A stretch of 64,000 nucleotides of DNA, taken from the IMG/VR virus record IMGVR_UViG_3300043399_000272, positions 124,001 through 188,000 of that record, one strand, 5' to 3'. Made by a program: the position numbers and the translations under genes. A model generated the notes under the pieces. It was not told the DNA's origin. It did no database searches and was given only the letters and a program-made list of their open reading frames with translations. Every line of letters starts with the position of its first letter. Within the stretch, counting starts at the first letter, position 1. Positions 3-62,428 of the stretch are shown one piece after another.

Positions 3-3000
3 ACTAACAATTACGCAAATGTGCCATTTGCTAAATCAGGAGGAATGATAACAGAAACATTTGGAACAAGTGTTGCGTATATTCCTGACTTTGGATATCT
101 AGTAGGTGATAGTGCTGCTGGAAAAGTTTATGTGTTTGTACAGGCTGATAACGGAAGTTTCTTCTTAAAAGATACTATGTCATATCCTGGTACTACATTT
201 GGCACAGTAATTGCATACAGTGAACAATTGGTTGTAATTACTGCACCGGGTCCAGCCCTAGGGATCAGTCAAATTTATATTTACAGAATACCAACTACCA
301 ACAGTATCAATGGTTTGACACTACAACAAGTAATTACATTTGGTGGCACTATAGGTAAGAGTGTAACTATCTCACAAGATAGTAACTTATTGTATTTAGG
401 AAGTGAAGATAACAACCTAGTTGTAATATTCCAATTAGATCGTGTTCCAACTCACACTGGTTCAGGACTTAGTTTAGCGGCGGCTACTCAGGTCAGAAGC
501 AAACAGTTTATATGTTCCGGTAATGTAGGTAACTTAATAACTGAAGGACAGCGTGTAAGTTTCTCAACAGCTTATACTAATTTAGGAGTAACAACTTATT
601 ACCCTATAACTGAATTCATGAATGAATTTAAAGTCTTGGGTAACCAAACAGGATTATTATCCTATGGTGATCAAGTGACGTTTAATACATCTGGAACCGG
701 TAGCACAATTGCATACACAATTGGTTCTTTCTATGTTGATGAAGGTCTAACATTAAATATCACCGGCGCTGCAGGCAATGGCACCTTTGCTGCGGTATCT
801 TATGCAGCACAAGCAGTTGCACCTTTCCAAATAGGAGAGAAAATTATAATCTCCGGTATGACACCGGCAGCGTACAATGGAACTCATACCGTAGTAGCTT
901 GTACTACAACTCAAGTCACCTTTGCATCAACTGCGACTGGACCAATGACAGTTGCAGGCACGGTGTCAGCACCTACAATAACTGTATTCAGTACTATAGA
1001 AAACTTTGCTACAGGAACTAATATTAATGTAGGTAACCCAATTTACAAGATTACTTTTAGCCAAGATGATGTGCATACTGTTGTAACGAGCACCTATAAT
1101 TCGTCTACAAATAAAACTACTTTCTTGTTGCAAGATGAAATTAGTTATTCTACTCCATCTGGATCTAATATCTTTATAGTGTCAGATGCATTTAGTATTG
1201 GTGGTATACTATCATCAGTATTAGCCGCAGAAGACGACAAGTATGGTTTTAGCCTAACTACCAATTACGATGGTAGTAAATTGTTTGTTGGAGCACCGTA
1301 CACTGATTTTAGCGAAAGTCTAACAGATACAGGTGTCGTGTTCGCATATGACAGATTGATCATAAATGTAGAAGTACAGTATGATCAAAAAGAAGGTCAA
1401 CCATTCGTTATTCGTCCTCCATTCACACCTACAGACCAAACTAGAGTACTGTTAAACGGTGTATTGTTACAGAGTAATCAATATATTGTTATATTTGGTG
1501 TAATATTTATTGATGATATTGGAATGGTTGCAGGAGATATCTTAACAGTTAACAGCATTAATTTTGTGCTAACATCACAATTGTTCAGCCAAGACAATTT
1601 AAGTGATTTGCGTCAAGGTGAGTTGTTCGGGTACAGTCTTTCTTCTAACAAGTATGGTAGTGAGTTATTAGTGGGTGTACCGTTCGATGTGTCGAATAAT
1701 ACACAAAAAGAGGGTTCTGTAATACGTTTTACAAATGCAGGAAAGCGTTTTGGAAGAATACAAGGTGTAATAGAATGCAACCTATATGAACCGACTTACT
1801 TATTACTAAACGGTCAGATTGTTAATGCATTCTCTGAAACACCATTGCTAGCTACTATAAGTACAGGTGCAACAACATGTACTATTAGTGCATTAGCAGC
1901 CTCATACTTACCTAACTCAGGTGTTATCTCGTTTACGAATACGTTAACTGGTAGCATACAGTCAATTGCTTATACTAGTGTAAACGCTACAACAGGTGTA
2001 ATAACATTTGCAGTTCCGCTACCAACTAAGAATGGGTCTTCTCAAACATTTACTGCCGGAACAACTACAGTTACATTGCCATTAGGTAACGCAGCAAATG
2101 TTGCGAATGCAATTAACAATACAAATATTGATAATATCAGAGCATTCTCAACTGAAGATAACAGACTACAAATTTTCTTATTAAAGAACAATTTAGGTCA
2201 ATCTAATAACAAATTGAATTTAGGTGTGTTTAATGGTAACTTCTTAACAATGTTAGGTGTTATAGATTATGTTAAGTCACAGGTCATTCAAGACCCACAT
2301 GCACAGACACATACTCAATTTGGTTATTCTGTAAAATTTAACCAAGAAGACTCGTTTGTTGTAGGAGCTCCATCTAGTGATAGATATAATTCCACTACGT
2401 TCGATGAGCAGTATGAGGACACACATAAAAACACTGTCTTTGATAATGACTTAACTATCTTTGAAGATCGTGCATTTAATGCAGGTAGTGTCTACATGTA
2501 TGATTATATTGTTTCATACGATGAGAGTCTCACCAATATCGGAAATTACATTTATGCACAATCATGCAATTACACAACTAATGATTATGGTTCTTTCCCA
2601 TACTATGGACAAGTTGTAGATTACAATGATGGTGTTGTTATGGTCGGCGCCCCACAGTTTAAACCGGGTGTTGAAAATGGACAAACTTGGATATTCGCTA
2701 ATGACTCTATGGAACCAAATTGGCACCCATATAGAGAAAGCGATCCAATCGTTAACACAGAAAAGATTCAAAAAGCACAACTGTATGACAACGTAACTAA
2801 CGAAACTCTTGTCTCTTTAGATTACATTGATCCGTTACAAGGAAAGTTATTAGGAGTAGTAGGAGAAAACTTAGATTTTGTTTCCACGACTGATCCTGCA
2901 AACTACACAGCGGTTGACATAAACAATGGAAGTGCAACTTGGTCATGGGCACAAGTAGGTAAACTATGGTTTGATACAAGCACTACTAAGTTCTTAAATT

Positions 3001-6000
3001 ACCATCAGAACGATGTTACGTATAATAGTGAATATTGGGGTTCTGTATTCCCTGGTAGTACCGTTACTGTCTACACTTGGATCGAAAGTTTAGTATTACC
3101 GGTATTGTATGAGGGACCGGGGACAGTCTATGATTCTGGTAAGTACTCAACTGTTTATGTAACTGATAGCAATGATAACTTAGTTCCTAAATATTACTTC
3201 TGGGTAAGAGGAACTAACCAGTTATTTACTGCTGCTGGCAAAACATTGACTGACTCTATCATTGAACAGTATATTGCTAATCCTAAGAATTCAGGTATTG
3301 CATTCGTTGCTCCACTAAGACCTAATACATATGCTTTCTATAACTCTAAAGAGTATATTAATAATAAAACTACAAACTTCCACTTAGGATACAGTAGTAG
3401 TGACAACGACAATACAGGTCATCAAGAATTCCAACTAATACGCACAAACTTTACTGATGATTTCTTGTATGGGTTTGTAAACACTAGCAAAGGATATGCT
3501 GTACCCACTAGTTTATATGACAAATATATCGATAGCTTCTCAGGCACAGATGAGATGGGTGCACCTGTTCCCGATATCACTTTACCTAAGTTGATGCAAT
3601 CAGGTGTTAGTGTAAGACCTAGACAAAGTTTTTACTATAATAGGCTATTAGCTCTACAAAATTACTTAGAGTATGCTAACAACGTAGTTAAGCAATATCC
3701 CATAAATGAGATGGGAAATATTACTTTCTTGTATGCACAGGGAGAATTCTATAACACACCTAACTATTGGGAAAATATTTATTGGTGGGCAGAAGGATAT
3801 AGTAATACTACGAAGGCAAGGTTCGAAGTACCGATTTATAGTGATCTATTAACACTAACTCCTACAGAGGGATTAATAGTAGGTGTTGCTCAAAATCCGC
3901 AAGGCAAGAGAGAAGTATATGTATATCGTGAGTCTAAGTGGTCTAGAATCGGTCTTGAAGATGGTACTATACAATTCTTAGATTCTTTGTGGGATTACAG
4001 TAGCAATCAAATTGGGTTTGGTGAGAATTTCTTTGACAACACCCCATATGATTCATATCCTTCAGTTGAAACTCGCTATATCATTCGAGCACTTAACGAA
4101 CAAATTTATGTTGGATCCCTACAACAACATAGAAATAATAGTTTAACCTTAATGTTTGAATATATTCAAAGTGAAAGTGTAGAAAACCAAAACTATTTAC
4201 CATGGCTAACAAAAACCAGCTTTGTTGATGTTCATTATACCGTTAGAGAACTCACTGAAAATGAAAAATTCCAGAGAGATAATCAAACTTTATTAGAAGG
4301 ATACATCAATGAACTTAAGCCGTACAGAGTTGTATTAAAAGATTTCTACTTAAAGTATAGTAAGACTGATTTATACGCAGGAGAGATAACAGACTTCGAT
4401 TTACCTGCAGTTTGGAATGACACTATAGGTAGATTTGTTTCACCACAGTTGACATTTAACCAAGATAACGGTCCTTATAAATTTGGCGTAGAGAATAATA
4501 TTTGGAACGAATATCAGTACAGCGATTGGTTCAATAATTACGGTACTATATTCTCAGAAATTAGTAACACGTTAGTTACCGAATTATCTGAATTTATTAG
4601 TAGCACACAAACTTACTTGTATGTTAAAAACTCTAATAGTTTACCGGTAACTGGTGTTATAAGAATAGGTGAAGAAAAAATTTCTTACGGTGGTATTTCT
4701 CAACTTGAAGGTAAACTAACTGGATTAATAAGAGGGTTTGATGATACAGTGTCCAGCTCACATACTGCTAATGCGTCGGTATATATGGATGTTCCTGCAG
4801 TTGTAGTACTTGATGCTGGTAGAGACTATGCTAGTACACCTAACGTCATTGCTTATGTTGATTTGAGTAAATATCCTCCACCAAAGAGAGAAGCTAGATT
4901 GCAAGCTGTTATGGCAGTAGACAAAGTAGCTTCAATAACTGTTGTAGATCCAGGTGAAGGTTACGTAACTACCCCATCTATTGTTATAGAATCAAGTGTG
5001 GAATATACTTCTACCAAAGACGCTATCAACTTTGTTTCTAATTTGGTTCAAGTAGAAACTACTGATCTTGCTACCGGTGAGTTAGTATATGTTTCTAGCA
5101 GTGCAGATAATGGAAGTAAGAAAATTATACCTGATGGATATTACTATATTAATGTAATTGAAATTTCATTGCTATCAGTAACAGGTACGTCCTTAGTCAG
5201 TTTCTATACCACTTTAGCAGATAGTATTAAGGGTATAAATCGAGTAGACTTTACAAACTCTGAATATATAAGTAATTCCTATACTATCACGGTGGGAATT
5301 CGAGCAAGAGCTAGAGCCACAATGGATAGCTTACAAGTTCGCTCATTAAAGCCAACTCTACGATTCGATAGAACTAGCTATCGTCCTATGATAACTCCAT
5401 GGACACCTAACGAGTATTATTCTAGTCAATATATTAGTTATGGTAATGATGCTAGTTCCCCAATCAAATTGTATGACAGTTTGGTTTATGAAAATGTATC
5501 GGGAACGGTTTCCCCTGCAGGCGGAACAGGTGCTACATTTACTGTATATGTAGTAGTTACTGGTGTCGAGTACAACGTTTCAGTAGAAGACTTGGGACAA
5601 GATTATGATATAGGTGACGTAATCACTATCTTAGGAACTTCTTTGGGCGGAACTACTTCAAATAATTGCATTATTACAGTAGATGCAGTTGACGGTGACG
5701 GTGGTATAACTGATGTAAGTGTATCCGGCACACCATTCATCTCAACTGAAGGGATTTACATTAATCCTAGTTATGCAAGTTTACAAGGTGCATTGTTACC
5801 AGTAACTGATTTGTCTAGTGTTGATGGTTCTGCAGTGGTTACAGTTGATTTAAACTACAGCGGATTAAAGCCAGGCCAAATTAATAATACTTATATGTAT
5901 TTCTTCACTGAGCCAACTGAAGCTAACCAAGGTATTTATGTTTACGATGATAGTTTATCAGGCGGTGCTGTGATTAGAATCAGTCGTCCTAAATTTAACC

Positions 6001-9000
6001 CTTCTGACCTCAGTAATCTATATGAAATATTGATCGAAGATGCTGGCTTAGGATACGCTGAGGGCAATGAAATTAGAATATCCGGAAGTTTATTAGGTGG
6101 ACAGAATGGTATTAACGATGCGATTATTGTTATTACCAAAGTAAACCCTGATACTTCTATTTTCTCAGCAACTATTTCAGGCACTGCGAATGGTGATTTT
6201 GGACGTTATTATGTAAGAGTAAATTCATACGACTCCGCATTGAACCAGTGTGAAATGTCAATATTCTCTGATCAAAATTTACTAATTCCTGTTTCTTATG
6301 CATCATTCATTTGGAACGGAACTAATACAAGTTACGGATACTTACCAGAACAAATAGTAGACAATTACACATTTAATTATAACGTTGGTTCTGTTGTATC
6401 TTATGCGGGATATGTGTGGAAATGTATCAACGCAAATAATGATAGTGAATTCAACGTCAATAACTGGATAATTATATCCAGTGACAATTACATCTTAAAT
6501 GCGCTTGATAGAATTGAAGCATACTATGAGCCTACTATCAATATGCCAGGAAAAGATCCTCAGCAATTGATGAAGGGTATATCATATCCTAATAACACTT
6601 ATCTAGGTAATAAGTTTGCTCCTGAAGATGAAATCCCATTAGATTTCATCTTACGAAATAATACGTTCTACCCTAGAACTATTAACATCAAGGGAGTCGT
6701 ATTCAATGGTAATACTGTTGTTGCAGTCGGTGACTCAACCTCTGGAAGCTCTGTATTAATATACGACAATGAAACGTCCTTGTTCTCTAACTATAATATT
6801 TCTGAAGTATCTTTGGGAATAACAGATTTATCATTCTCTAATGGTAGATATGTGTTGACTACAACAAATCAAAATCAATCAGTGTGGATCAGTGATGATG
6901 CAGTTAACTGGTTCACAGTTGGTACATATAGTCCTTATGATTTTATGGATTATGATGAATTACAATATGATTCTTCTGGTTTGGTCGTAGAAAGTTATCC
7001 TAAGAACGGCGCGCTTGCTGCCGATGAATTCTCACTAGTTACAGGAAATCAATCTATTTCTAAATCTACTGATGAAGTAGTTTGGGAAGAAATATTCAAC
7101 ATTCAATCTAACTTAAATCAGATACTAAAAGATATTATCTATGTAGATATTTCAGCATTCACTGGCTACATGGCATTTGGTGTCGGAGAAGAAGTTACAT
7201 CTGGTGCAGGTACTGCTGCACCAGTGATAAGTAGTTGTTCCTTAATTTACACAAGTGATGACACTACTGTTTGGACAAAGCAAACTCCTACACTAAGTAC
7301 ATTGGGTATTTACGGTGCGGTTGCAACTACCACGTCTGTTATAGTAGTGGGAGAATCAGGGTTAATATACTCAACAACAAATATGTCTACATGGACCGCG
7401 GGAGTAATTTCAGGGTCACCCGTGACTACAAATATAAATTCTGTTGCATTTGGTAACGGTGTCTTTGTTGCAGTAGGAGATAAAACAGGTACAAGTTCTA
7501 CTGATCCTGGATTAATATTACGTTCTACTAACGGCACAACTTGGACACAAGTTTCCAGTGTATTCTTTACGAATAACAACCTAAACAAGGTTACTTATGG
7601 TGAAGATGGATACTTCTATGCTGCAGGTGAAAACGCAACAATACTAAGAAGTTTGAATGGGTCAAATTGGGAAAACATGTCTAATATTCAAGTTGACGAT
7701 CCTTACTATATTGTACAAGGTAATGACTTCTTGTTTGGTTACGGCCCTGAAGAATTAGTCCCTGGAATAGTAACAGACACGTTATCTATGTATGTAAGAA
7801 GTGCACCTGGTGCATATTGGGACTTGGATACCGTCACTACTATAAATCCAGATGTTCCGTATTGGTACAAGCACACTGGATTTAACATGCAGACAGTCGT
7901 TGCTAAACCTGACAATGACAATGTTGTTAGTTTTGCAGGTTTAGTAGTAAACCCAATGACATTGAGCGTATTCGTCATAGATGATGAAACTCAATTAGGT
8001 ACTAGAATTTATACTGACCTAAGTTCTAATACACCGGTCACAACCAGTAGTAATCCTATAGGATACTCTATTGACTGGATAACAGAGACAATTACATTGT
8101 CTGGCGCAATTTCTGCCACTGAATCTATCATGATTGAAGTTTATGAAGTTGGTAATGGTCAAGAACTCGTGAGAGCGAATTCTAAGATTTACCCAATGAA
8201 GACAGATGGAAATGGAAAAACTATTATTGTATTTGAACAGTTGTACCAAGAAATCGTAGCAGATCCTGTAGTATTTGTTAATGGTGTAAAATTTGAATAT
8301 GTTACTACATTTACGGATACAAACCAATTTACTGTAACAAACACATCTGAAAACTTCTTGATGTTGCAGTTTAATACCGCGCTCTCATCAGAAACTGACT
8401 ATGTAGTGTATGCAATATTGGCAACAGGTTCTACTCTCAGAAACCGTAATCAAGTATTAAACTATAGTATTCCAGAAACACAAGTTTATGTACCTACAGG
8501 AACTGAGACAACGATTGATTTAGATTTTGATATATCGATCGGCACCAATGAAGACAATGCAATTGTTGAAGTTAATGGTGAACGCCTAATACCAGTCACT
8601 GAATATTCATTTAACACATCAACTAATCAACTTGTTTTAGTAAATTCAGTCACTAGTGACGATATTGTAGCCATTACTACTTACAATGATACTTCTAGAC
8701 AATGGTTAGTAACTGATACCTACACTGGCATTTCAGTGTACCCTATAAGTTATATAGATACTTCATTGGCTGTAGCGACAATTACATTTGAAACTGATCC
8801 AGCATATAGTTCAGGGACAATGGTGTATATTAATGGCACTAACGGAACTGTAGAACTAAATAGAAACGCTTATTATGTAAAACCAGTTGAAGTGGATAGT
8901 GTCTATTATTATGAAATATACACCGATGCTGATTTATACTATCCAGTTACTGGTCACGATATCGGCACGTATACTGGTGGTGGTGTAGCAAGTGAAAGTA

Positions 9001-9878
9001 CATTCTCAGTACCCTACCCAGATGTTCCGTTCGGAATGGATCCAATGACATATACTGAAGGAAGTAGAACATGGATCACTGTAAATAGCAAGAGAATAGA
9101 CCCTTCACTTGTAATTTTTGGTGAGAATAATCAGTTGAGTATAATCAGTGATATTTCTAGCAGTGACCAGGTAGTAATAACTGCTATGGTTACAGGAGCA
9201 AGTCCAAACCCAATGACGTTTGATATTAACATCAATAAGTATTCAACTCCGGTGGCATATAGAACTAACTTGCAAGATGGTTCTTGGTTAACTGAAGAAT
9301 TTACAGGTGAAACGGATTATATGACGTTCTTTAACGTAAGCAACTTAGTAGAATCTATTTCTAAGACACTAACCGTAATTGCAAATGGTACAGAGTTATA
9401 TACATTATTGCAAGTTAATATCAACCAGATTAAGGAAGTTATTGTATATAATAATACTACTCTTACTACACTAAGCAGTAATGATTTCACTTTGAGCTTG
9501 ATTTCAGGCGCAAGTGGGTTGACATTCACAAACGGTGCAGAAGAAGGTGACTCAATAACAGTAACGTTAATATTGGGAGACACTGTAGAAATTAACGGAG
9601 AGCGTATTAGATTCAGTACAATTTCTATTGAAAATAATACTATTTCTGGATTGACTCGCGGTGTTGACGGAACACTAGTAGCTCCGGTTCATCCTCAATA
9701 TGCTATAGGATATGGTATCAACGATGCAAGAAGATTGACGCCTGAGCAATATAGTGTAGTTTGGGAAAGTACAGATATTGTATCTACTTCATATTATGAC
9801 GAGATTCCTAAAACAGATCCATTACAGATCAGTACAACGGAAATTGCTCAGTTTTTACAAAGTAGCGCATCAAATTGA
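3..9878 (+). CDS. Giant virion structural protein (baseplate/tail-associated), 5'-partial
   Basis: The frame is open to the window edge. It has FG-GAP-like repeats (FGYSL..GS.L.VG.P), Asp-box repeats (RSTNGTTW, RSLNGSNW) and a CBM-like YNVGSVVSYAGYVWKC. It is T/S/N-rich and followed by tail genes. Confidence 0.75.
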   Translation, partial: TNNYANVPFAKSGGMITETFGTSVAYIPDFGYLVGDSAAGKVYVFVQADNGSFFLKDTMSYPGTTFGTVIAYSEQLVVITAPGPALGISQIYIYRIPTTNSINGLTLQQVITFGGTIGKSVTISQDSNLLYLGSEDNNLVVIFQLDRVPTHTGSGLSLAAATQVRSKQFICSGNVGNLITEGQRVSFSTAYTNLGVTTYYPITEFMNEFKVLGNQTGLLSYGDQVTFNTSGTGSTIAYTIGSFYVDEGLTLNITGAAGNGTFAAVSYAAQAVAPFQIGEKIIISGMTPAAYNGTHTVVACTTTQVTFASTATGPMTVAGTVSAPTITVFSTIENFATGTNINVGNPIYKITFSQDDVHTVVTSTYNSSTNKTTFLLQDEISYSTPSGSNIFIVSDAFSIGGILSSVLAAEDDKYGFSLTTNYDGSKLFVGAPYTDFSESLTDTGVVFAYDRLIINVEVQYDQKEGQPFVIRPPFTPTDQTRVLLNGVLLQSNQYIVIFGVIFIDDIGMVAGDILTVNSINFVLTSQLFSQDNLSDLRQGELFGYSLSSNKYGSELLVGVPFDVSNNTQKEGSVIRFTNAGKRFGRIQGVIECNLYEPTYLLLNGQIVNAFSETPLLATISTGATTCTISALAASYLPNSGVISFTNTLTGSIQSIAYTSVNATTGVITFAVPLPTKNGSSQTFTAGTTTVTLPLGNAANVANAINNTNIDNIRAFSTEDNRLQIFLLKNNLGQSNNKLNLGVFNGNFLTMLGVIDYVKSQVIQDPHAQTHTQFGYSVKFNQEDSFVVGAPSSDRYNSTTFDEQYEDTHKNTVFDNDLTIFEDRAFNAGSVYMYDYIVSYDESLTNIGNYIYAQSCNYTTNDYGSFPYYGQVVDYNDGVVMVGAPQFKPGVENGQTWIFANDSMEPNWHPYRESDPIVNTEKIQKAQLYDNVTNETLVSLDYIDPLQGKLLGVVGENLDFVSTTDPANYTAVDINNGSATWSWAQVGKLWFDTSTTKFLNYHQNDVTYNSEYWGSVFPGSTVTVYTWIESLVLPVLYEGPGTVYDSGKYSTVYVTDSNDNLVPKYYFWVRGTNQLFTAAGKTLTDSIIEQYIANPKNSGIAFVAPLRPNTYAFYNSKEYINNKTTNFHLGYSSSDNDNTGHQEFQLIRTNFTDDFLYGFVNTSKGYAVPTSLYDKYIDSFSGTDEMGAPVPDITLPKLMQSGVSVRPRQSFYYNRLLALQNYLEYANNVVKQYPINEMGNITFLYAQGEFYNTPNYWENIYWWAEGYSNTTKARFEVPIYSDLLTLTPTEGLIVGVAQNPQGKREVYVYRESKWSRIGLEDGTIQFLDSLWDYSSNQIGFGENFFDNTPYDSYPSVETRYIIRALNEQIYVGSLQQHRNNSLTLMFEYIQSESVENQNYLPWLTKTSFVDVHYTVRELTENEKFQRDNQTLLEGYINELKPYRVVLKDFYLKYSKTDLYAGEITDFDLPAVWNDTIGRFVSPQLTFNQDNGPYKFGVENNIWNEYQYSDWFNNYGTIFSEISNTLVTELSEFISSTQTYLYVKNSNSLPVTGVIRIGEEKISYGGISQLEGKLTGLIRGFDDTVSSSHTANASVYMDVPAVVVLDAGRDYASTPNVIAYVDLSKYPPPKREARLQAVMAVDKVASITVVDPGEGYVTTPSIVIESSVEYTSTKDAINFVSNLVQVETTDLATGELVYVSSSADNGSKKIIPDGYYYINVIEISLLSVTGTSLVSFYTTLADSIKGINRVDFTNSEYISNSYTITVGIRARARATMDSLQVRSLKPTLRFDRTSYRPMITPWTPNEYYSSQYISYGNDASSPIKLYDSLVYENVSGTVSPAGGTGATFTVYVVVTGVEYNVSVEDLGQDYDIGDVITILGTSLGGTTSNNCIITVDAVDGDGGITDVSVSGTPFISTEGIYINPSYASLQGALLPVTDLSSVDGSAVVTVDLNYSGLKPGQINNTYMYFFTEPTEANQGIYVYDDSLSGGAVIRISRPKFNPSDLSNLYEILIEDAGLGYAEGNEIRISGSLLGGQNGINDAIIVITKVNPDTSIFSATISGTANGDFGRYYVRVNSYDSALNQCEMSIFSDQNLLIPVSYASFIWNGTNTSYGYLPEQIVDNYTFNYNVGSVVSYAGYVWKCINANNDSEFNVNNWIIISSDNYILNALDRIEAYYEPTINMPGKDPQQLMKGISYPNNTYLGNKFAPEDEIPLDFILRNNTFYPRTINIKGVVFNGNTVVAVGDSTSGSSVLIYDNETSLFSNYNISEVSLGITDLSFSNGRYVLTTTNQNQSVWISDDAVNWFTVGTYSPYDFMDYDELQYDSSGLVVESYPKNGALAADEFSLVTGNQSISKSTDEVVWEEIFNIQSNLNQILKDIIYVDISAFTGYMAFGVGEEVTSGAGTAAPVISSCSLIYTSDDTTVWTKQTPTLSTLGIYGAVATTTSVIVVGESGLIYSTTNMSTWTAGVISGSPVTTNINSVAFGNGVFVAVGDKTGTSSTDPGLILRSTNGTTWTQVSSVFFTNNNLNKVTYGEDGYFYAAGENATILRSLNGSNWENMSNIQVDDPYYIVQGNDFLFGYGPEELVPGIVTDTLSMYVRSAPGAYWDLDTVTTINPDVPYWYKHTGFNMQTVVAKPDNDNVVSFAGLVVNPMTLSVFVIDDETQLGTRIYTDLSSNTPVTTSSNPIGYSIDWITETITLSGAISATESIMIEVYEVGNGQELVRANSKIYPMKTDGNGKTIIVFEQLYQEIVADPVVFVNGVKFEYVTTFTDTNQFTVTNTSENFLMLQFNTALSSETDYVVYAILATGSTLRNRNQVLNYSIPETQVYVPTGTETTIDLDFDISIGTNEDNAIVEVNGERLIPVTEYSFNTSTNQLVLVNSVTSDDIVAITTYNDTSRQWLVTDTYTGISVYPISYIDTSLAVATITFETDPAYSSGTMVYINGTNGTVELNRNAYYVKPVEVDSVYYYEIYTDADLYYPVTGHDIGTYTGGGVASESTFSVPYPDVPFGMDPMTYTEGSRTWITVNSKRIDPSLVIFGENNQLSIISDISSSDQVVITAMVTGASPNPMTFDININKYSTPVAYRTNLQDGSWLTEEFTGETDYMTFFNVSNLVESISKTLTVIANGTELYTLLQVNINQIKEVIVYNNTTLTTLSSNDFTLSLISGASGLTFTNGAEEGDSITVTLILGDTVEINGERIRFSTISIENNTISGLTRGVDGTLVAPVHPQYAIGYGINDARRLTPEQYSVVWESTDIVSTSYYDEIPKTDPLQISTTEIAQFLQSSASN

Positions 9879-30130: not shown

Positions 30131-30155
30131 CAACACTCAAAAATAAATATACAAT
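30127..30155 (+). promoter_or_regulatory. sigma70 promoter of the tmRNA
   Basis: TTGACA-17 nt-TACAAT, with TAAATA inside the spacer. Confidence 0.85.
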
Positions 30156-30160
30156 GTGAG

Positions 30161-30476
30161 TTATTGCTGTATGAAGCAAAGAGAAAAGTGTTCTGGACCC
30201 GGGTTCGACTCCCGGCATCTCCACCATAAGCACACTAGTTGGGACAAAACGGTTAGATGTTTCCTCGCAAGACGAACTCTAAGCGCCCATCTAGTTAGTG
30301 TGTTTATGATGGGGATGACTTTGGTTTTCGACAGGGCAAAGAGTAACAGAGTGGACAGCACATCAGCAACGATGTAAAAAGAAGAAAATCTATAACTGCA
30401 AACGCAGCCAATGATGAGGTATTTGCCCTAGCGGCATAATCTCTGGGGGAACTATCCCTTATAACCCAAAATAGTA
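30161..30476 (+). ncRNA. ssrA: Circularly permuted (two-piece) tmRNA
   Basis: The acceptor piece comes first: T-arm CCGGG-TTCGACT-CCCGG and CATCTCC-A-CCA ending at 30226. An intervening segment spans 30227-30310. The coding piece starts GGGGATG at 30311 and pairs with CATCTCC including G3.U70. Tag ORF 30398-30439 reads ANAANDEVFALAA*. Confidence 0.93.
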
Positions 30477-30499
30477 ATAGGGACTCAGTCCCTATTTTT
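30476..30499 (+). terminator. Intrinsic terminator after the tmRNA
   Basis: AATAGGGAC-TCA-GTCCCTATT followed by a T run. Confidence 0.75.
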
Positions 30500-31118
30500 C
30501 TGGATATTGCCAAGTCCAAGACCCGTCCTCTCTATATAATCTCGTTCTGCCCTTAACCTTAGTAGATAATTTAGCGGCACCTTTTCTAGCATTTTCGGCA
30601 GCCTGAGGATTTGAAAGCCCTTTATTCCAACTACTTACTCTTGGATTTTTAATTACAAGTCTCTTGCCAATATTATTTCTAGCAGTATTTCTTGCGGCAC
30701 AAGATTGACTGCAAAAAGGCTTTTCTCGTAACGGATGATGACAAAATTCTAACTTACTAAAAATCTTTGAACACTCTAAACATAAATATTGCCTACTTTC
30801 TTTTGGTTTAGTTTTTGTTCTTTTATTTTGAACAGAAAGTAATTTTGAATGTTCTAACCTTGCTCTTTCGTAATATCTGTTGGTATAGTTCTTTTTTCTA
30901 CCCATTAGATTTACAGCATGCCATTGGGTTCCTCCGTAGATTTTTGCCAAAAGAATGTGTGCTACATAATGTTCTCTGGCTGTTAAATTAACAAGATTAT
31001 CCGGGTCACCAGTCCCGCCCATAGATTTAGGAATAATATGATGGGCTTCTTTGTATCCCTCTAACAATCTTTCTTTTGCTCTTTCTATTAACAAATTATA
31101 GTGTTTGGTGTAGTTCAT
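30492..31118 (-). CDS. HNH homing endonuclease
   Basis: EAHHIIPKSMGG...NLVNLTAREHYVAHILL; C-terminal Zn finger (CLEC..FCSQSC) and NUMOD-like WNKGL. Confidence 0.9.
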   Translation of the reverse strand: MNYTKHYNLLIERAKERLLEGYKEAHHIIPKSMGGTGDPDNLVNLTAREHYVAHILLAKIYGGTQWHAVNLMGRKKNYTNRYYERARLEHSKLLSVQNKRTKTKPKESRQYLCLECSKIFSKLEFCHHPLREKPFCSQSCAARNTARNNIGKRLVIKNPRVSSWNKGLSNPQAAENARKGAAKLSTKVKGRTRLYREDGSWTWQYPEK

Positions 31119-33939: not shown

Positions 33940-34485
33940 ATGAAAACAATCGGCGATAAAATTACAAGTTTTGCAGTTACTGGCGTTAAGCCCGGCGCAC
34001 TTACTCCAGAGGGCGCATTCGAAACTATTACTGACAAAAGTTTCGAAGGAAAATGGAAAGTTATTGTTTACTATCCTAAGGACTTCACTTTCGTATGTCC
34101 TACTGAGATTGTTGCTTATGACAAGCTCAATGGTGACTTTAGTGACCGTGACGCAGTTCTATTGATCGGTAGTACTGACAATGAATTCTGTAAACTAGCA
34201 TGGCGTAATGCACACGCGGATCTAAAAGAGACAAACTCTTGGTCATTCGCTGATGTTGCACGTGACGAAAACAGTCTAGCACAACAACTAGGTATCTTCT
34301 ATGGTCCAGCAGGTGCGGCACTTCGTGCTACATTCATCGTTGACCCTGATAACGTTATCCAGCACGTTACAGTAAACAACTTGGACGTTGGTCGTAACCC
34401 AGATGAAACATTGCGTATTCTTGACGCATTGCAAACCGGTGAACTATGCCCATGCTCACGTCCAATCGGTGGTGAGACACTATAA
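33940..34485 (+). CDS. ahpC: 2-Cys peroxiredoxin
   Basis: YPKDFTFVCPTE, RATFIVDP, VGRN..E.LR..DALQ..ELCPC. Confidence 0.96.
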   Translation: MKTIGDKITSFAVTGVKPGALTPEGAFETITDKSFEGKWKVIVYYPKDFTFVCPTEIVAYDKLNGDFSDRDAVLLIGSTDNEFCKLAWRNAHADLKETNSWSFADVARDENSLAQQLGIFYGPAGAALRATFIVDPDNVIQHVTVNNLDVGRNPDETLRILDALQTGELCPCSRPIGGETL

Positions 34486-34820
34486 TGTATTATCACGCAC
34501 ACATCTACTGGCAGAATGAAGCGCAAAGGTTTGAAGCACTAAAACTAAGACAACCTTTGCAAGAGTTGGGTTGCCAACTCGGCTCGATGCATGATGAACC
34601 AATTGGTCCTCATCCTTATGCAATGTATCAAGTTAATTACAATAGCAATATTGCAGAAGACGTTGAAGAATTTCTTTCTAAAACTAAACTAGATATTCTG
34701 TTGCATGAAGATACAGGAGATGATGTGCGTGATCATACAACTGGTGCAAGGTGGATTGGGAACAAACTTACTCTAAACATTGAGTGGTTAAGAAACTATA
34801 TGAGAGGAGAAAGAAAATGA
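34485..34820 (+). CDS. DOPA 4,5-dioxygenase family protein
   Basis: YHAHIY, PIGPHP..MYQ, ILLH..TG...RDH..GA.W.G. Confidence 0.85.
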   Translation: MYYHAHIYWQNEAQRFEALKLRQPLQELGCQLGSMHDEPIGPHPYAMYQVNYNSNIAEDVEEFLSKTKLDILLHEDTGDDVRDHTTGARWIGNKLTLNIEWLRNYMRGERK

Positions 34821-34882
34821 ACTTTCGTGATTTATTTGAGTATCTAAAAAGAGAACACTGCCCTACTTGTCAAGGTAAATAA
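34817..34882 (+). CDS. 21-aa CxxC micropeptide
   Basis: MNFRDLFEYLKREHCPTCQGK; GGAG SD; ATGA and TAATG overlaps at both ends. Confidence 0.55.
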   Translation: MNFRDLFEYLKREHCPTCQGK

Positions 34883-35505
34883 TGTTAGAAACTATTTGTG
34901 ATACATTAGTAGAAGCATATAAACGTAATTGGATTACCAGTCGTGATGGCAATGTAAGCATTCGTCACCATGACAGAAATCATTTTTATATTACTCCTAG
35001 CGGCGTGCGTAAGCAAACTCTACAGCCCGATCAATTCAAGAAAATTAGTATTCATGGGTTGCTTTGGCAAGAGGAACATTATACAGACATAAGTGCTAAA
35101 TTAAAACCTAGCGGCGAATTACCACTGCATTTTGGTTTGCAAAGAGCAATGGGGCAACATCGCAATGATGTTAGAGTTGTAGTACATCTACATCCCACAT
35201 ATTGTGTTGCTGCAATGCATAGGGGAATTGAGTTGGGAAATCTTGCAAAAGATTTTCCTGAACTTAGTCGCTATACAAAAGTTGCACCTAACGTAGGAGA
35301 TGTTCCTCCAATTAGTCAAGAACTGGCTGATGCTTGTCATAAGAATTTGGAACTTGATGAATATTCAGGTAACATAAAGTATGATATTGTTGGCATTAAA
35401 GGTCATGGAGTTGTAGCTATTGATACAAGTCCATGGAGAGCGTTTGAGCATATCGAACGACTAGAACACATTTGCCAAATCGTATTGGCGTCCGGAAAAT
35501 ACTAA
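34882..35505 (+). CDS. Class II aldolase/adducin family protein
   Basis: DGNVS, ITPSG, KPSGE..LH, VVHLHP, GHGV. Confidence 0.88.
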   Translation: MLETICDTLVEAYKRNWITSRDGNVSIRHHDRNHFYITPSGVRKQTLQPDQFKKISIHGLLWQEEHYTDISAKLKPSGELPLHFGLQRAMGQHRNDVRVVVHLHPTYCVAAMHRGIELGNLAKDFPELSRYTKVAPNVGDVPPISQELADACHKNLELDEYSGNIKYDIVGIKGHGVVAIDTSPWRAFEHIERLEHICQIVLASGKY

Positions 35506-35514
35506 GGAAATAAA

Positions 35515-35682
35515 ATGCAAGTAAGAGTAGCAGAAGAAGGTAAAAGAATTGGTACGTGTGGTTGCGGTCGTAGCCCCACCGGTGACTGTATCGGTTGGCA
35601 CGGTCTAACAGAAGATCAATTTCAATTAGAATTATCAAAATATAAAGAAACAGTTTTAGAAGAAAAAACAAGAGAGGAATAA
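35515..35682 (+). CDS. CDGSH-type iron-sulfur-like small protein (55 aa)
   Basis: AAGGA SD; CGCGRSPTGDCIGWH approximates the C-x-C-x2-S...C-x-G-x-H ligand set. Confidence 0.65.
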   Translation: MQVRVAEEGKRIGTCGCGRSPTGDCIGWHGLTEDQFQLELSKYKETVLEEKTREE

Positions 35683-35684
35683 TT

Positions 35685-36203
35685 ATGACACAATGGGTAG
35701 ACGCATTAAAAGAACAAAGTATCCCTGATTATGCAAAGGATACAAAGTTAAATATGGACGCAGTTATCAAGCGTTCAGCACTTCCCGTAGAAGAGGCAGA
35801 AGCGGTTGCATTAGCAGCAGCATTTGCAACAGGCAATAGCAAACTATGGACTTGGATGGAAAGTCAGATTGCTAACAAGACTGAGACACATGCAGCACTT
35901 ACAGCGGCAGCATTGATGGCACAAAACAACGTTTGGTATCCGTTTGTTGAAATGGCTGATGACGAAAATCTAAAAGGTCTTCCTGCTCAATTACGTATGA
36001 ATGCTATTAGTACAAGCGGTGGTACAACTAAAGAACGTTTTGAAGCATATAGCTTGGCAGCAAGTATTGTTGGTAAGTGCCACTTCTGTGTAAAAGCACA
36101 TTATGAAGGACTAAAGAAAATGGGCTATACAGTAGAACAACTACGTGATATAGGTCGCATTGCAAGTGTCATTAACTCAGTATCTAAAGTAGTAGCAAAC
36201 TAA
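35685..36203 (+). CDS. ahpD: Alkylhydroperoxidase AhpD (CMD family)
   Basis: IPDYAKD.KLN, MAQNNVWY, FE...LAAS...KCHFCV..H. Confidence 0.92.
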   Translation: MTQWVDALKEQSIPDYAKDTKLNMDAVIKRSALPVEEAEAVALAAAFATGNSKLWTWMESQIANKTETHAALTAAALMAQNNVWYPFVEMADDENLKGLPAQLRMNAISTSGGTTKERFEAYSLAASIVGKCHFCVKAHYEGLKKMGYTVEQLRDIGRIASVINSVSKVVAN

Positions 36204-36204
36204 T

Positions 36205-36612
36205 ATGGCAAGTCTAGCTGAATATTTTGAGAAGAACCGTCCTCAACCTTATTTTGAGTTCGGTACACGTGTGTTCGGTAAATGGAATAAGATTCCTTTT
36301 GTTGGCACAGTATACGGGGATGGTATGATCAATGAAGAAGACGGCCCACGCCTAACAATTCATCTAGACTTGCCCATTAAAGTTGATAACACAGTTAAAA
36401 CAATTATAATTGATACGTATGACAAATTTAAGGGTCTAGTAGAATTATCAGACCCGGATGCGCCCGTAGCTGATCGGAAAGCAAGAGCCTCTAAAACTCA
36501 AGGTAGTGGGTTCGACTCCCACCGAGCGCACCAAACAAAACCTAAAGCTAAGGAGAAATCTAAGTCAACTTCTCTATTAGAGAATTTGAAAAAGCTCAGG
36601 GAAAAGAAATAA
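36205..36612 (+). CDS. Hypothetical protein whose C-terminal part overlaps a tRNA gene
   Basis: Globular N-terminus (GTRVFGKWNKIPFVG..IHLDLP); the tail DAPVADRK...HRAHQ is encoded by the tRNA sequence. Confidence 0.65.
   Translation: MASLAEYFEKNRPQPYFEFGTRVFGKWNKIPFVGTVYGDGMINEEDGPRLTIHLDLPIKVDNTVKTIIIDTYDKFKGLVELSDPDAPVADRKARASKTQGSGFDSHRAHQTKPKAKEKSKSTSLLENLKKLREKK
36460..36533 (+). tRNA. tRNA with CUA anticodon (amber suppressor type), imperfect stems, nested in a CDS
   Basis: Acceptor GCGCCCG/CGAGCGC (6/7 pairs) plus A-CCA; T8A9; D-stem GCT/AGC with GG; anticodon loop CT-CTA-AA (CTA at 36491-36493) on AGAGC/ACTCA (3/5 pairs); perfect T-arm GTGGG-TTCGACT-CCCAC. Confidence 0.8.
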
Positions 36613-36620
36613 ATATCTGT

Positions 36621-36773
36621 ATGATTAAGTTACCTTTTATAGGATTAATGGGAGTAGGAAGCGATAACATGCTTTATACTCCTAATGGCGAAGCTCTATT
36701 CAGAGCGCCCGAATGGGCAGCGTGGCGCATCCAGCGCATTCAACATTGGATTGCACAAAAAACTTGGAGATAA
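36621..36773 (+). CDS. 50-aa hypothetical protein
   Basis: ATG 5 nt after TAAATA; MIKLPFIGLMGVG...QKTWR. Confidence 0.55.
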   Translation: MIKLPFIGLMGVGSDNMLYTPNGEALFRAPEWAAWRIQRIQHWIAQKTWR

Positions 36774-36775
36774 AA

Positions 36776-37378
36776 ATGGCATAGATTGAATTTGATTGTA
36801 AAGACATAGTGTTTCACTTCAACAAGAAACACCTAGAAGATCAGACCATTCCCATGTGGGTCTTAAAATTTCATGGTGAAACATATTATGTGAATCATGT
36901 GGAATGCAATGTTCCATGGTCTACTAAAGAGACTCCTGACAATTCACATACTAAAGGCTCTATTAAAGTCAGAGACTGTTTGTTACAGATTGCCGATAAC
37001 AACGAAGCCAAAATATCACCCATCACAGAAATTGACAAAGCACGAATCCGTAATACCAAAAAAGGTATCACCCGCGTTACAGTTAGTGAGCGTAACTGGG
37101 GAGGACAAAAGTTGCGTAAGTTGTTACGAGAAAAGAAAATCAAGCATGGCCCTATCAAAACTATAGGTGGCGCATGTACAACATCTTTCCATATCACTGA
37201 TATTTTTAACGAACAGGATGTAACTTATCTTGCGTTAATGTTGTCTGATACTGACTTTAGAAAACTCATGCCTAATGAAGGATACTACAGGATGTACGAT
37301 GACCCAAAGTATCAAGGGACCGGCGATATCGATTTGGATGCTGAGGACTGGTCCGATGATGACGAGAACGACCAATAA
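36776..37378 (+). CDS. Hypothetical protein with in-frame TAG at codon 3 (MA*IEFDCKDIVFHFNKK...)
   Basis: GGAGA SD plus ATG at 36776, in frame with the ORF called from GTG 36809; TAG at 36782-36784. Confidence 0.65.
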
Positions 37379-62173: not shown

Positions 62174-62428
62174 ATGACATTACCGGACGAACGCTACCGT
62201 GCCCTTAAGCAAGGTAAAAAATTATTAGAGGAGTTATGTGACCCCGGTCGCACCCCTCGTGTCCCTAGTATTATCAGAGATAAAGCAAGAGGTGCATTGC
62301 GCCATTTCCCACAAGATTGGGAAATCGATGCGTTAGCAGATAAATGCCCAGATATGCTTGATAAAGTATCATTTACTGATAAACTATTACAAAAACAACT
62401 TGGAGATAAAATTGGCAAAACCATTTGA
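62174..62428 (+). CDS. Hypothetical protein (BPSL0761-like)
   Basis: MTLPDER.RA......L..L...TPRVP..IR..A...LRHFP. Confidence 0.65.
   Translation: MTLPDERYRALKQGKKLLEELCDPGRTPRVPSIIRDKARGALRHFPQDWEIDALADKCPDMLDKVSFTDKLLQKQLGDKIGKTI

What the first reader, a model, noticed from the sequence alone, without database searches (positions are those of the whole stretch)
36205..36612. Complete tRNA overprinted by a protein-coding frame on the same strand
Seen: the whole tRNA lies inside ORF 36205-36612 and encodes DAPVADRKARASKTQGSGFDSHRAHQ, followed by a Lys-rich tail. Inference: excision by RNase P and 3' trimming would cut this mRNA and leave a stop-less message, the substrate of the phage tmRNA 6 kb away. 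Suppressor production and this protein's expression could then be mutually exclusive. Alternatively the gene lost its stop codon and absorbed a decaying tRNA.
Basis: partly seen in the sequence, partly recalled or inferred. Interest (0 to 1): 0.6.

Follow-up and report, generated by a model that had tools for sequence, protein, structure and literature searches.

The report
Suppressor tRNA nested inside a protein gene
In this large phage, a working-looking amber-suppressor tRNA gene lies entirely inside a small protein gene on the same strand and in frame, and related phages show selection on both the tRNA fold and the protein read through it, so the same 74 bases appear to serve two purposes.

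Summary
ORF 36205-36612 (+, 135 aa) contains a complete tRNA(CUA) at 36460-36533 (ARAGORN; Rfam tRNA 54.3 bits; encoded CCA).

It is not a gene-caller artefact and not a decaying tRNA.
- Across 18 related tRNAs the cloverleaf holds: 94.8% of cells paired, 11 of 18 pairs with compensatory changes, 0/500 shuffles as good.
- The 25 codons after the tRNA are under protein-level selection in this frame only: dN/dS 0.16 with no stops, against 0.89 and 2.9 with 36 and 30 stops in the other frames.
- The reading frame survives three different tRNA versions (74, 77, 77 nt), tRNA decay in two relatives, and an in-frame deletion of half the tRNA in another.
- Only 3 of 49 related tRNA(CUA) genes are spanned by an ORF. 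Two of these are this gene family.

The tRNA has a likely client. The neighbouring gene (36776-37378) has TAG as its third codon, as do 79 of 80 homologous loci, mostly with a tRNA(CUA) just upstream. TAG ends 1 of 56 ORFs here.

A promoter-like site inside the ORF (36383-36410) is conserved wherever the tRNA is embedded.

The cleavage, non-stop and tmRNA scenario is logical but untested, and the tmRNA is not specific to the overlap.

The parts
36205..36612 (+). Read-through ORF of 135 aa: an N-terminal beta-barrel domain, a linker encoded by the tRNA, and a basic helical tail
   Evidence: ORF list. About 25 homolog clusters of about 134 aa share the same architecture. The AlphaFold2 model has pLDDT 80-90 for residues 20-80, low confidence for 90-119, and a helix at 120-134.
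36205..36459 (+). N-terminal domain (85 aa), a Tudor/SH3-like beta barrel. Its ATG lies 1 nt after the stop of the upstream CMD/AhpD-like gene.
   Evidence: 244 homologs. dN/dS is 0.13. Fold matches are generic only: CarD N-terminus, UvrD C-terminal Tudor domain, Sm and CAP-Gly, with Z at most 7.0. There is a weak Pfam Glyoxalase_8 hit below its cut-off.
36383..36410 (+). Sigma-70-like promoter motif TTGATA-16-TATAAT inside the coding sequence, with the -10 hexamer ending 49 nt before the tRNA
   Evidence: 11 of 12 consensus matches. The -10 hexamer (the Ile-Ile-Ile codons) and the TTGA core are kept at the same place in all loci with an embedded tRNA of both frame classes. The -10 is broken in L111, where the tRNA has decayed, and the motif is absent where the tRNA lies upstream of the gene. 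Function is inferred.
36460..36533 (+). tRNA with anticodon CUA (amber suppressor), 74 nt, CCA encoded, read in frame as 25 codons of the ORF
   Evidence: ARAGORN. Rfam tRNA at 54.3 bits. Covariation across 18 relatives: 94.8% paired, covariation score 0.511 against 0.198 shuffled, 0/500 shuffles as high, slid controls at most 0.14. Mismatches in this copy: C5.A68, A27.A43, C31.A39.
36534..36612 (+). Tail coding segment (25 codons plus TAA), with the conserved core S-x-S-x-x-L-L-E-N-L-K-K
   Evidence: Core of 18 codons in 15 sequences: frame 0 has dN/dS 0.16 and no stops, frames 1 and 2 have 0.89 and 2.9 with 36 and 30 stops. Substitutions by codon position are 26/18/45, like the N-domain. There is no conserved in-frame start codon upstream of it.
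36621..36773 (+). Small ORF (50 aa) between the read-through ORF and the amber gene. Its end carries the ribosome-binding site of the next gene.
   Evidence: ORF list. The same 3' end is seen upstream of the amber gene in L029, L154, L155, L158 and L164. Function is unknown.
36776..37378 (+). Neighbouring gene with an in-frame amber codon: GGAGA, ATG 36776, GCA, TAG 36782-36784, then 197 sense codons. This is the probable client of the tRNA(CUA).
   Evidence: In 79 of 80 homologous viral loci a TAG sits at codon 3-6 just before the conserved I-E-F/Y, behind a Shine-Dalgarno motif and an ATG. 65 of the 80 have a tRNA(CUA) within 5 kb. Among the loci of the small gene, homologs occur only where there is a tRNA(CUA).
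35685..36203 (+). Upstream CMD/AhpD-like gene. Its stop lies 1 nt before the ATG of the read-through ORF, and the synteny is conserved.
   Evidence: Pfam CMD, E 1.2e-11. The same neighbour is seen in L004, L107 and L108.
30134..30530 (+). Phage tmRNA of the permuted (two-piece) type, tag ANAANDEVFALAA. It is context only.
   Evidence: ARAGORN. Rfam tmRNA_permuted at 119.8 bits. tmRNA genes also lie near free-standing tRNA(CUA) genes in relatives.

Best explanation
This is true dual coding. A functional amber-suppressor tRNA gene is nested, on the same strand and in frame, in the linker of a small phage protein.

Shown by comparison:
- The tRNA is kept as a cloverleaf by compensatory changes.
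- The ORF is kept open through it, and the peptide encoded after it is under purifying selection.
- So ribosomes must read through the tRNA sequence on at least some transcripts. The 25 tRNA-encoded residues act as a low-complexity linker between a Tudor/SH3-like domain and a basic C-terminal helix.

Inferred mechanism:
- The locus gives two products from RNA molecules with different fates.
- Operon transcripts that are translated yield the full 135-aa protein, with translation coupled to the upstream CMD gene.
- Transcripts, or transcript copies, that fold and are cut by RNase P and 3' trimming yield the tRNA.
- A conserved promoter-like site inside the ORF, 49 nt upstream of the tRNA, probably makes ORF-less transcripts that supply tRNA without costing protein.
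- The mature tRNA(CUA) then reads the TAG at codon 3 of the neighbouring gene 36776-37378, which is thereby gated by the suppressor. The phage avoids TAG as a terminator for its own genes.

Inferred origin: the common arrangement in relatives is a free-standing, self-promoted tRNA(CUA) next to the amber gene, often with the small gene between them. In this lineage the small gene came to lie upstream of the tRNA, lost its stop and was extended across it, gaining the tail.
For: The tRNA is real and constrained:
- ARAGORN and Rfam at 54.3 bits.
- RNAalifold recovers the cloverleaf, with 11 of 18 pairs showing compensatory changes.
- 94.8% of cells are paired against 78.8% in shuffles, and the covariation score is 0.511 against 0.198 (0/500). 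Slid controls reach at most 0.14.
- The 31:39 position is a C.A or A.C mismatch in 16 of 18 sequences, with both orientations.

The ORF is translated through the tRNA:
- Tail dN/dS is 0.16-0.18, against 0.13 for the N-domain and 0.53 for the tRNA segment.
- Substitutions are biased to the third codon position in the tail (26/18/45) but nearly flat in the tRNA segment (22/26/33).
- Ser codons switch between TCN and AGY, and Leu uses all six codons, at fixed tail positions.
- Three different tRNA versions (74 nt, and two unrelated 77-nt forms) sit in the same phase with the same tail.
- L113 deleted the 3' half of the tRNA in frame and kept the tail. L111 and L106 have decayed tRNAs but an intact ORF and tail.
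- No in-frame start codon lies between the tRNA and the tail.

The overlap is not generic: 3 of 49 related tRNA(CUA) genes are spanned by an ORF.

A second lineage reads the tRNA in the other open frame. There the 5' acceptor strand encodes the conserved K-R-L at the end of the domain.

Client gene. TAG terminates 1 of 56 ORFs.

Internal promoter motif. Free-standing relatives have strong promoters ending 8-12 nt before the tRNA, so this tRNA is normally its own transcription unit.
Against: - There are no expression data of any kind. Neither the 74-nt RNA nor the 135-aa protein has been seen.
- The window's own tRNA copy has an acceptor-stem mismatch (C5.A68) and only three Watson-Crick pairs in the anticodon stem. 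Its close relatives also carry one acceptor mismatch, of varying identity, which could mean relaxed constraint in this subclade.
- The genome is at least 260 kb and only 64 kb is in hand, so another tRNA(CUA) copy could serve the amber gene.
- The tail statistics rest on 15 sequences that have recombined with each other.
- The promoter motif is partly forced by conserved amino acids, and it also occurs in some relatives without a tRNA.
- The amino acid carried by the tRNA is unknown.
Confidence: 0.7

Rival explanations
1. The overlap is a neutral by-product of genome compaction. The small gene lost its stop, and the extension is tolerated. Both products are made, but the overlap has no regulatory use, and the conserved tail merely became useful to the protein afterwards.
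For: Genes in this stretch are packed with gaps of 1-9 nt. The tRNA sits upstream of the gene, inside it in frame 0, or inside it in frame 2 in different lineages, which looks like opportunistic rearrangement. The lineage that uses the second frame has short tails that are not conserved. Relatives lose the tRNA and keep the protein.
Against: This rival does not conflict with dual coding itself. It conflicts only with a regulatory reading. The overlap arose or was transferred in at least three places on the N-domain tree. Wherever the tRNA lies downstream of this gene, there is never a stop codon before it, which hints at more than tolerance.
Confidence: 0.4
2. The tRNA in the window is a decaying pseudogene that the ORF has absorbed. 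Only the protein is functional here.
For: The window copy has C5.A68, A27.A43 and C31.A39 mismatches. Position 68 varies among A, C and T in the closest relatives, as the synonymous third base of an Arg codon. Clear decay or deletion has happened in L111, L106 and L113.
Against: The Rfam score of 54.3 bits is among the highest of the whole set. The anticodon loop CUCUAAA, the T-loop and the CCA are intact. The A.C mismatch at 31:39 is a conserved feature of the functional-looking family, not a sign of decay. The amber gene beside it keeps its TAG and an intact 197-codon frame, and no other tRNA(CUA) lies in the 64 kb.
Confidence: 0.1
3. The long ORF is an annotation artefact. The transcript is always cut at the tRNA and the tail is never translated, so the real product is the 85-aa domain released from a stop-less message.
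For: Distant homologs end at 79-93 aa, exactly where the tRNA starts. RNase P cleavage of tRNA-containing transcripts is efficient in bacteria (textbook knowledge). A phage tmRNA is present.
Against: The tail shows purifying selection in this frame only. The frame is preserved across tRNA length variants, and the deletion in L113 is in frame. The tail is kept after tRNA decay. None of this is expected for sequence that is never translated.
Confidence: 0.05
4. The tRNA is excised like an intron and the flanks are rejoined, giving a shorter protein in a shifted frame.
For: After removal of 74 or 77 nt the shifted frame meets a stop within 2-4 codons in 8 of 13 relatives examined by eye (sequences).
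Against: No ligase or splicing signal was looked for or seen. The shifted frames of the tail show no selection (dN/dS 0.89 and 2.9) and are full of stops. Early stops are expected anyway in Lys-rich, A-rich sequence. The conserved tail is in the unshifted frame.
Confidence: 0.02

Closest known systems
Stop-codon recoding in phages that carry suppressor tRNAs (Borges et al. preprint, 10.1101/2021.08.26.457843)
   Same: A low-GC phage depleted in TAG terminators carries a tRNA(CUA) and has an in-frame TAG in a gene next to it. That paper proposes the route of rare stop, then suppressor acquisition, then in-frame stops that gate particular genes, and describes a 'code change module' placed upstream of the recoded genes.
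   Different: Only one gene in 64 kb carries an in-frame TAG. It always sits at codon 3-6, and the rest of the window uses the standard code. That work does not describe a suppressor tRNA nested inside a coding sequence. I did not read all of it: a term search of the text gave nothing on this.
tmRNA (SsrA)
   Same: One gene whose RNA carries both a tRNA function and a translated open reading frame. A tmRNA is also encoded 6 kb away.
   Different: In tmRNA the tRNA-like domain and the tag ORF occupy different nucleotides and act in one molecule. Here the same nucleotides are the tRNA and the codons, and the two functions need different fates of the RNA.
Dual-function bacterial RNAs that act as an RNA and also encode a peptide (SR1/SR1P, PMC5013986; SgrS/SgrT and RNAIII/hld from my own knowledge)
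   Same: One transcript region has a non-coding RNA role and a coding role, and both are conserved.
   Different: Those are base-pairing regulators with short peptides, whose functional parts are usually separate. Here the RNA product is a complete tRNA released by processing, fully overlapped by the codons of a longer protein.
tRNA-mRNA co-transcripts in bacteria (tufB operon, secG-leuU, tyrT-tpr; my own knowledge)
   Same: The tRNA and the protein message are made as one transcript and separated by RNase P and RNase E. Cleavage affects the stability of the message.
   Different: In those operons the tRNA lies outside the coding sequence, so cleavage does not sever an ORF.
Overprinted (overlapping) genes of phages and viruses, and tRNA/CDS overlaps of a few bases in animal mitochondria (my own knowledge)
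   Same: Compact genomes use the same bases for two products, and new coding sequence arises by extending an ORF over existing sequence.
   Different: Classical overprinting is protein over protein in different frames. Mitochondrial tRNA overlaps involve a few terminal bases, not a whole tRNA inside a reading frame.

Membership tests
tRNA (Rfam RF00005) | Cloverleaf sequence and structure scoring above the family's gathering threshold | tested here: met
   54.3 bits against a threshold of 29. ARAGORN also calls it.
tRNA (Rfam RF00005) | Stems maintained by compensatory substitutions among relatives | tested here: met
   11 of 18 pairs show changes on both sides, 94.8% of cells are paired, and 0/500 shuffles reach the observed values.
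Amber suppressor tRNA | Anticodon CUA in a 7-nt loop with U33 and a purine at position 37 | tested here: met
   The loop is CUCUAAA. The same loop, or UUCUAAA, occurs in 16 of 18 relatives.
Amber suppressor tRNA | A client: in-frame UAG codons in genes of the same genome | tested here: met
   TAG at 36782-36784 is codon 3 of the next gene, and this is conserved in 79 of 80 homologous loci.
Amber suppressor tRNA | Expression, aminoacylation and decoding of UAG | not testable with these tools
   No expression data are available. The amino acid identity is unknown. The 'Q' seen in database proteins comes from translation under code 15, not from evidence.
Pyrrolysine tRNA (ARAGORN's label 'tRNA-Pyl') | The special pylT architecture (6-bp anticodon stem, 3-nt variable loop; my own knowledge) | tested here: not met
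   The anticodon stem has 5 positions and the variable loop has 5 nt. The label only reflects the CUA anticodon. pylS and pylBCD were not searched for.
Overlapping (dual-coding) genes | The same nucleotides on the same strand belong to two gene products | tested here: met
   The tRNA at 36460-36533 lies wholly inside ORF 36205-36612.
Overlapping (dual-coding) genes | Independent evidence of selection on each product | tested here: met
   RNA covariation. Protein-level selection on the downstream tail, and frame maintenance through tRNA variants, decay and deletion.
Stop-codon-recoded phage (genetic code 15, TAG read as Gln) | In-frame TAG codons spread over many genes, typically the late genes | tested here: not met
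   One gene in the 64 kb has it. The window includes terminase and virion genes, and these lack in-frame TAG.
Stop-codon-recoded phage (genetic code 15, TAG read as Gln) | TAG depleted as a terminator | tested here: met
   Terminators are TAA 35, TGA 20 and TAG 1 of 56. TAG is common out of frame: 42 of the 154 stop codons that immediately precede, in frame, a stop-free stretch of 70 or more codons.
Non-stop message rescued by trans-translation | An mRNA whose 3' end lies inside the ORF after processing, and tagging of the product by tmRNA | not testable with these tools
   This follows from RNase P cleavage at 36459/36460 if it occurs. The tmRNA is present but is equally found near non-overlapping tRNAs in relatives.

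The most novel reading that the evidence does not exclude
The overlap is a switch. On each operon transcript, ribosomes coupled from the upstream gene either unfold the tRNA and finish the 135-aa protein, or the tRNA folds first and is excised. Excision leaves a stop-less message for the 85-aa domain, which is rescued by the phage or host tmRNA, and releases the suppressor that opens the amber-gated neighbouring gene. The translation state of the infected cell would then set the ratio of protein to suppressor, and so time the gated gene.
Probability: 0.2. Interest if true: 0.85.

Novelty: new variant of a known kind. Interest (0 to 1): 0.68.

Why it matters
Annotation pipelines and textbooks treat a tRNA inside a coding sequence as an error. 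Here comparative evidence indicates that both readings are real and have been maintained over substantial divergence.

That gives a natural case in which RNA-structure constraints and codon constraints act on the same 74 bases. It also gives a concrete system for asking how translation and tRNA processing compete on one transcript.

It further exposes a compact, widespread module in large freshwater-type phages: a self-promoted suppressor tRNA plus a gene with an amber codon at position 3-6. This looks like the minimal form of suppressor-gated gene expression, an early stage on the road to full stop-codon recoding.

In practice, gene callers either truncate the amber gene or silently translate TAG as Gln, which can mislead homology-based reasoning.

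Tried and rejected
1. TAG recoding across the window. There is no pair of coding-looking segments joined by TAG. A second candidate (ATG 62328, TAG 62334) is rejected. It lies out of frame inside a small ORF at 62175-62428, and homology of the large gene starts near 62412.
2. 'TAG aligns with a conserved Gln.' I first inferred this from database N-termini such as M-A-Q-I-E-Y. The DNA of one of them reads ATG GCA TAG ATT, and the tool reports that it does not translate to the query under table 11. The Q comes from code-15 gene calling, so the inference was circular and is withdrawn.
3. Isotype of the tRNA. There is no match in E. coli genomes. The nearest phage hits are tRNA-Sup of Xanthomonas jumbo phages at 81-83% identity. 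One relative (L112) carries anticodon CCA in the same scaffold, which hints at Trp ancestry but settles nothing.
4. Function of the two proteins. Pfam, PHROGs, Foldseek and VIA-align give only generic folds. The small domain is Tudor/SH3-like, and the C-terminal half of the amber protein is ferredoxin/ACT/RRM-like. All matches are under Z 8.
5. Close cultured relatives. There are none. Only weak protein similarity to Ralstonia and Xanthomonas jumbo phages was found. In XacN1 the two tRNA-Sup genes are intergenic.
6. Literature. Six full-text searches found no description of a tRNA nested in a coding sequence of a phage or bacterium. The library is limited, so this does not prove absence.
7. 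The tmRNA as a partner specific to the overlap. This is not supported.
8. The excision-and-religation model. It is rejected on frame statistics.

Full report
**What is there**

The window is part of a large tailed phage with GC 38%. It carries a terminase, virion proteins and many auxiliary genes. Identical stretches lie on viral contigs of 148 and 260 kb. There are no close cultured relatives.

ORF 36205-36612 on the + strand has 135 codons. ARAGORN finds a 74-nt tRNA with anticodon CUA at 36460-36533 on the same strand. Rfam's tRNA model scores it at 54.3 bits against a threshold of 29. The tRNA begins at a codon boundary and is read as 25 codons. CCA is encoded.

**Is the tRNA functional?**

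I collected relatives of the small gene from viral contigs, metagenomes and assemblies.

Eighteen related tRNAs give the cloverleaf as the RNAalifold consensus. Eleven of the 18 pairs keep pairing through changes on both sides. On that structure:
- 94.8% of cells form standard pairs, against 78.8% in shuffles;
- the covariation score is 0.511 against 0.198;
- no shuffle in 500 reaches either value;
- sliding the partners by 1-3 columns drops the score to 0.14 or less.

Acceptor pairs 4-7, anticodon-stem pairs 28:42 and 29:41, and T-stem pairs 49:65 to 51:63 each show several pair types. Position 31:39 is a C.A or A.C mismatch in 16 of 18 sequences, in both orientations. It therefore looks like a selected feature, not damage.

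The window's copy has one acceptor mismatch (C5.A68) and a weak anticodon stem. Even so, it scores among the best of the set.

**Is the ORF really translated through it?**

Homologs fall into two length classes. Distant ones have 79-93 aa and end where the tRNA starts. About 25 clusters of about 134 aa continue through the tRNA into a tail with the core S-x-S-x-x-L-L-E-N-L-K-K. Several lines show that this tail is protein:
- In the 18-codon tail core of 15 sequences, the ORF frame has dN/dS 0.16 and no stop codon. The other two frames have 0.89 and 2.9, with 36 and 30 stops.
- Substitutions by codon position are 26/18/45 in the tail and 77/51/159 in the N-domain. They are nearly flat (22/26/33) in the tRNA segment, as expected if RNA structure rules there.
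- Serine positions switch between TCN and AGY codons, and leucine positions use all six codons.
- Three different tRNA versions sit in the same phase in front of the same tail: the 74-nt form and two mutually dissimilar 77-nt forms, one in L004 and one in L105, L109 and L110. Free-standing relatives have lengths of 73 to 77 nt.
- L113 has lost the 3' half of the tRNA by an in-frame deletion and keeps the tail.
- L111 has a broken anticodon loop and T-stem, and L106 has a mutated T-loop. Both have decayed tRNAs, yet the ORF and tail are intact.
- No in-frame start codon lies between the tRNA and the tail, so the tail can only be reached by reading through the tRNA.

In the AlphaFold2 model the N-domain is a confident beta barrel. 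The tRNA-encoded part has low confidence, and the tail forms a helix.

**Is the overlap a generic accident?**

It is not. Through the unrelated neighbouring gene I fetched 80 further viral loci carrying 49 distinct tRNA(CUA) genes. Only three are spanned by an ORF with at least 40 codons upstream. Two of these are this gene family and one is a junk ORF.

Wherever the tRNA lies downstream of the small gene, no stop codon ever comes before it.

A second lineage (L057, L071, L034, L039) reads the tRNA in the other open frame. There the 5' acceptor strand GCGTTTG encodes the conserved K-R-L at the end of the domain. The third frame is closed by TAA in the anticodon loop.

On a tree of the N-domain, embedded tRNAs occur in three separate places. 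L109 combines the N-domain of one clade with the tRNA type of another, so recombination moves these parts.

In other relatives the tRNA lies just upstream of the small gene, in the order tRNA, small gene, amber gene.

**What the tRNA is for**

The next substantial gene was called from GTG 36809. It is in fact in frame with GGAGA, ATG 36776, GCA and TAG 36782-36784, followed by the conserved I-E-F-D-C-K-D.

In 79 of 80 homologous viral loci a TAG sits at codon 3-6 immediately before I-E-F/Y, behind a Shine-Dalgarno motif and an ATG. 65 of the 80 loci have a tRNA(CUA) within 5 kb, usually 30-400 nt upstream on the same strand. Among the loci of the small gene, this amber gene is found only where a tRNA(CUA) is present.

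In the window, TAG terminates 1 of 56 ORFs, although it is common out of frame. No other gene in the 64 kb has an in-frame TAG.

The tRNA is thus best read as an active suppressor whose client is the neighbouring gene. Which amino acid it inserts is unknown. The 'Q' in database translations comes from gene calling under code 15.

**Transcription**

Free-standing relatives have strong TTGACA-17-TATAAT promoters ending 8-12 nt before the first base of the tRNA in about 27 of 49 cases. This tRNA is therefore normally its own transcription unit and often the 5' end of the amber gene's transcript.

In the window a TTGATA-16-TATAAT motif lies inside the N-domain coding sequence at 36383-36410. Its -10 hexamer is the codon triplet for Ile-Ile-Ile, whose middle codon is ATA in 15 of 17 relatives; ATA makes up 29% of Ile codons in the window.

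The motif is at the same place in all loci with an embedded tRNA, in both frame classes. It is broken in L111 and absent where the tRNA lies upstream. It also occurs in a few relatives without a tRNA, and it is partly dictated by the protein sequence, so promoter function remains an inference.

**How it most likely works**

Shown: the same 74 bases are kept both as a tRNA and as codons.

Inferred:
- Operon transcripts translated from the upstream coupled gene give the full protein.
- Transcripts that fold and are processed give the tRNA.
- The internal promoter can supply tRNA without the start of the ORF.
- The tRNA opens the amber-gated gene.
- For any one full-length transcript the two fates exclude each other. 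A transcript cut at 36459/36460 would carry a stop-less message for an 85-aa product, which matches the full length of the short homologs.
- Whether the phage exploits this as a switch is open, and so is whether its tmRNA handles the stop-less product. tmRNA genes are also found near non-overlapping tRNA(CUA) genes (15 of 80 loci).

**Comparison with what is known**

The nearest framework is stop-codon recoding by phage suppressor tRNAs (10.1101/2021.08.26.457843). This window fits the proposed early stage: TAG depleted as a terminator, a suppressor acquired, and one gated gene. It is not a recoded genome.

tmRNA, dual-function small RNAs, tRNA-mRNA co-transcripts and overprinted genes each share one aspect. 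None has a complete tRNA serving as in-frame codons of a conserved protein.

I found no description of such a case in six literature searches. The library is limited.

**Verdict**

I rate the locus a new variant of known kinds (overlapping genes, dual-function RNAs), supported by comparative evidence only. Interest 0.68.

Noticed in passing
window 36776-37378 (TAG at 36782-36784); loci L115-L194: The neighbouring gene has an amber codon as codon 3. In 79 of 80 homologous viral loci a TAG sits at codon 3-6 before the conserved I-E-F/Y, always followed by A. 65 of the 80 have a tRNA(CUA) within 5 kb. The family is large: 1487 database proteins and 256 viral loci. Its function is unknown; the C-terminal half is ferredoxin/ACT/RRM-like.
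   Followed up: yes
whole window: TAG ends only 1 of 56 long ORFs (TAA 35, TGA 20). That one ORF (30492-31118, minus strand) overlaps the tmRNA gene and may not be real. TAG is common out of frame.
   Followed up: partly
proteins P0121-P0240, for example P0124 / L195 1344-1946: The protein database translates the in-frame TAG of this family as Q (code-15 gene calling). N-termini such as M-A-Q-I-E-Y are therefore not evidence for glutamine. Other clusters are truncated to a later Met or Val.
   Followed up: yes
loci L119-L191, upstream of free-standing tRNA(CUA) genes: About 27 of 49 have a near-consensus TTGACA-17-TATAAT ending 8-12 nt before tRNA base 1. This implies almost leaderless tRNA transcripts which, where the gap is 30-60 nt, would continue into the amber gene.
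   Followed up: partly
L112 828-901: One relative carries the same tRNA scaffold with anticodon CCA (Trp) and G73, still inside the ORF. There the ORF stops 4 codons after the CCA end and lacks the tail.
   Followed up: partly
tRNA positions 31:39 in window 36460-36533 and relatives: A C.A or A.C mismatch closes the anticodon loop in 16 of 18 tRNAs, and its orientation differs between tRNA types. It looks selected. The discriminator base varies between A73 and G73.
   Followed up: partly
window 30134-30530; L004 1350-1866: The phage encodes a tmRNA of the permuted, two-piece type (Rfam tmRNA_permuted 119.8 bits) with an ALAA-ending tag. tmRNA genes recur near the tRNA(CUA)/amber module in relatives (15 of 80 loci).
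   Followed up: partly
window 33940-36203: A run of redox and metabolic genes lies just upstream: an AhpC-type peroxiredoxin, a DOPA-dioxygenase-like protein, a class II aldolase and a CMD/AhpD-like protein. Relatives add rubrerythrin, rubredoxin or TerC in the same neighbourhood (L106, L108).
   Followed up: no
L109 against L107 and L105: L109 has the N-domain of the 74-nt tRNA clade but the 77-nt tRNA type and tail of another clade. This indicates recombination within the gene.
   Followed up: partly
window 21-9878: A single ORF of 3285 aa occupies the first 10 kb. It was not examined.
   Followed up: no
window 62175-62428: A small ORF of 84 aa with a good ribosome-binding site lies between two larger genes. 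The following large gene probably starts at a TTG near 62414, not at 62358.
   Followed up: partly
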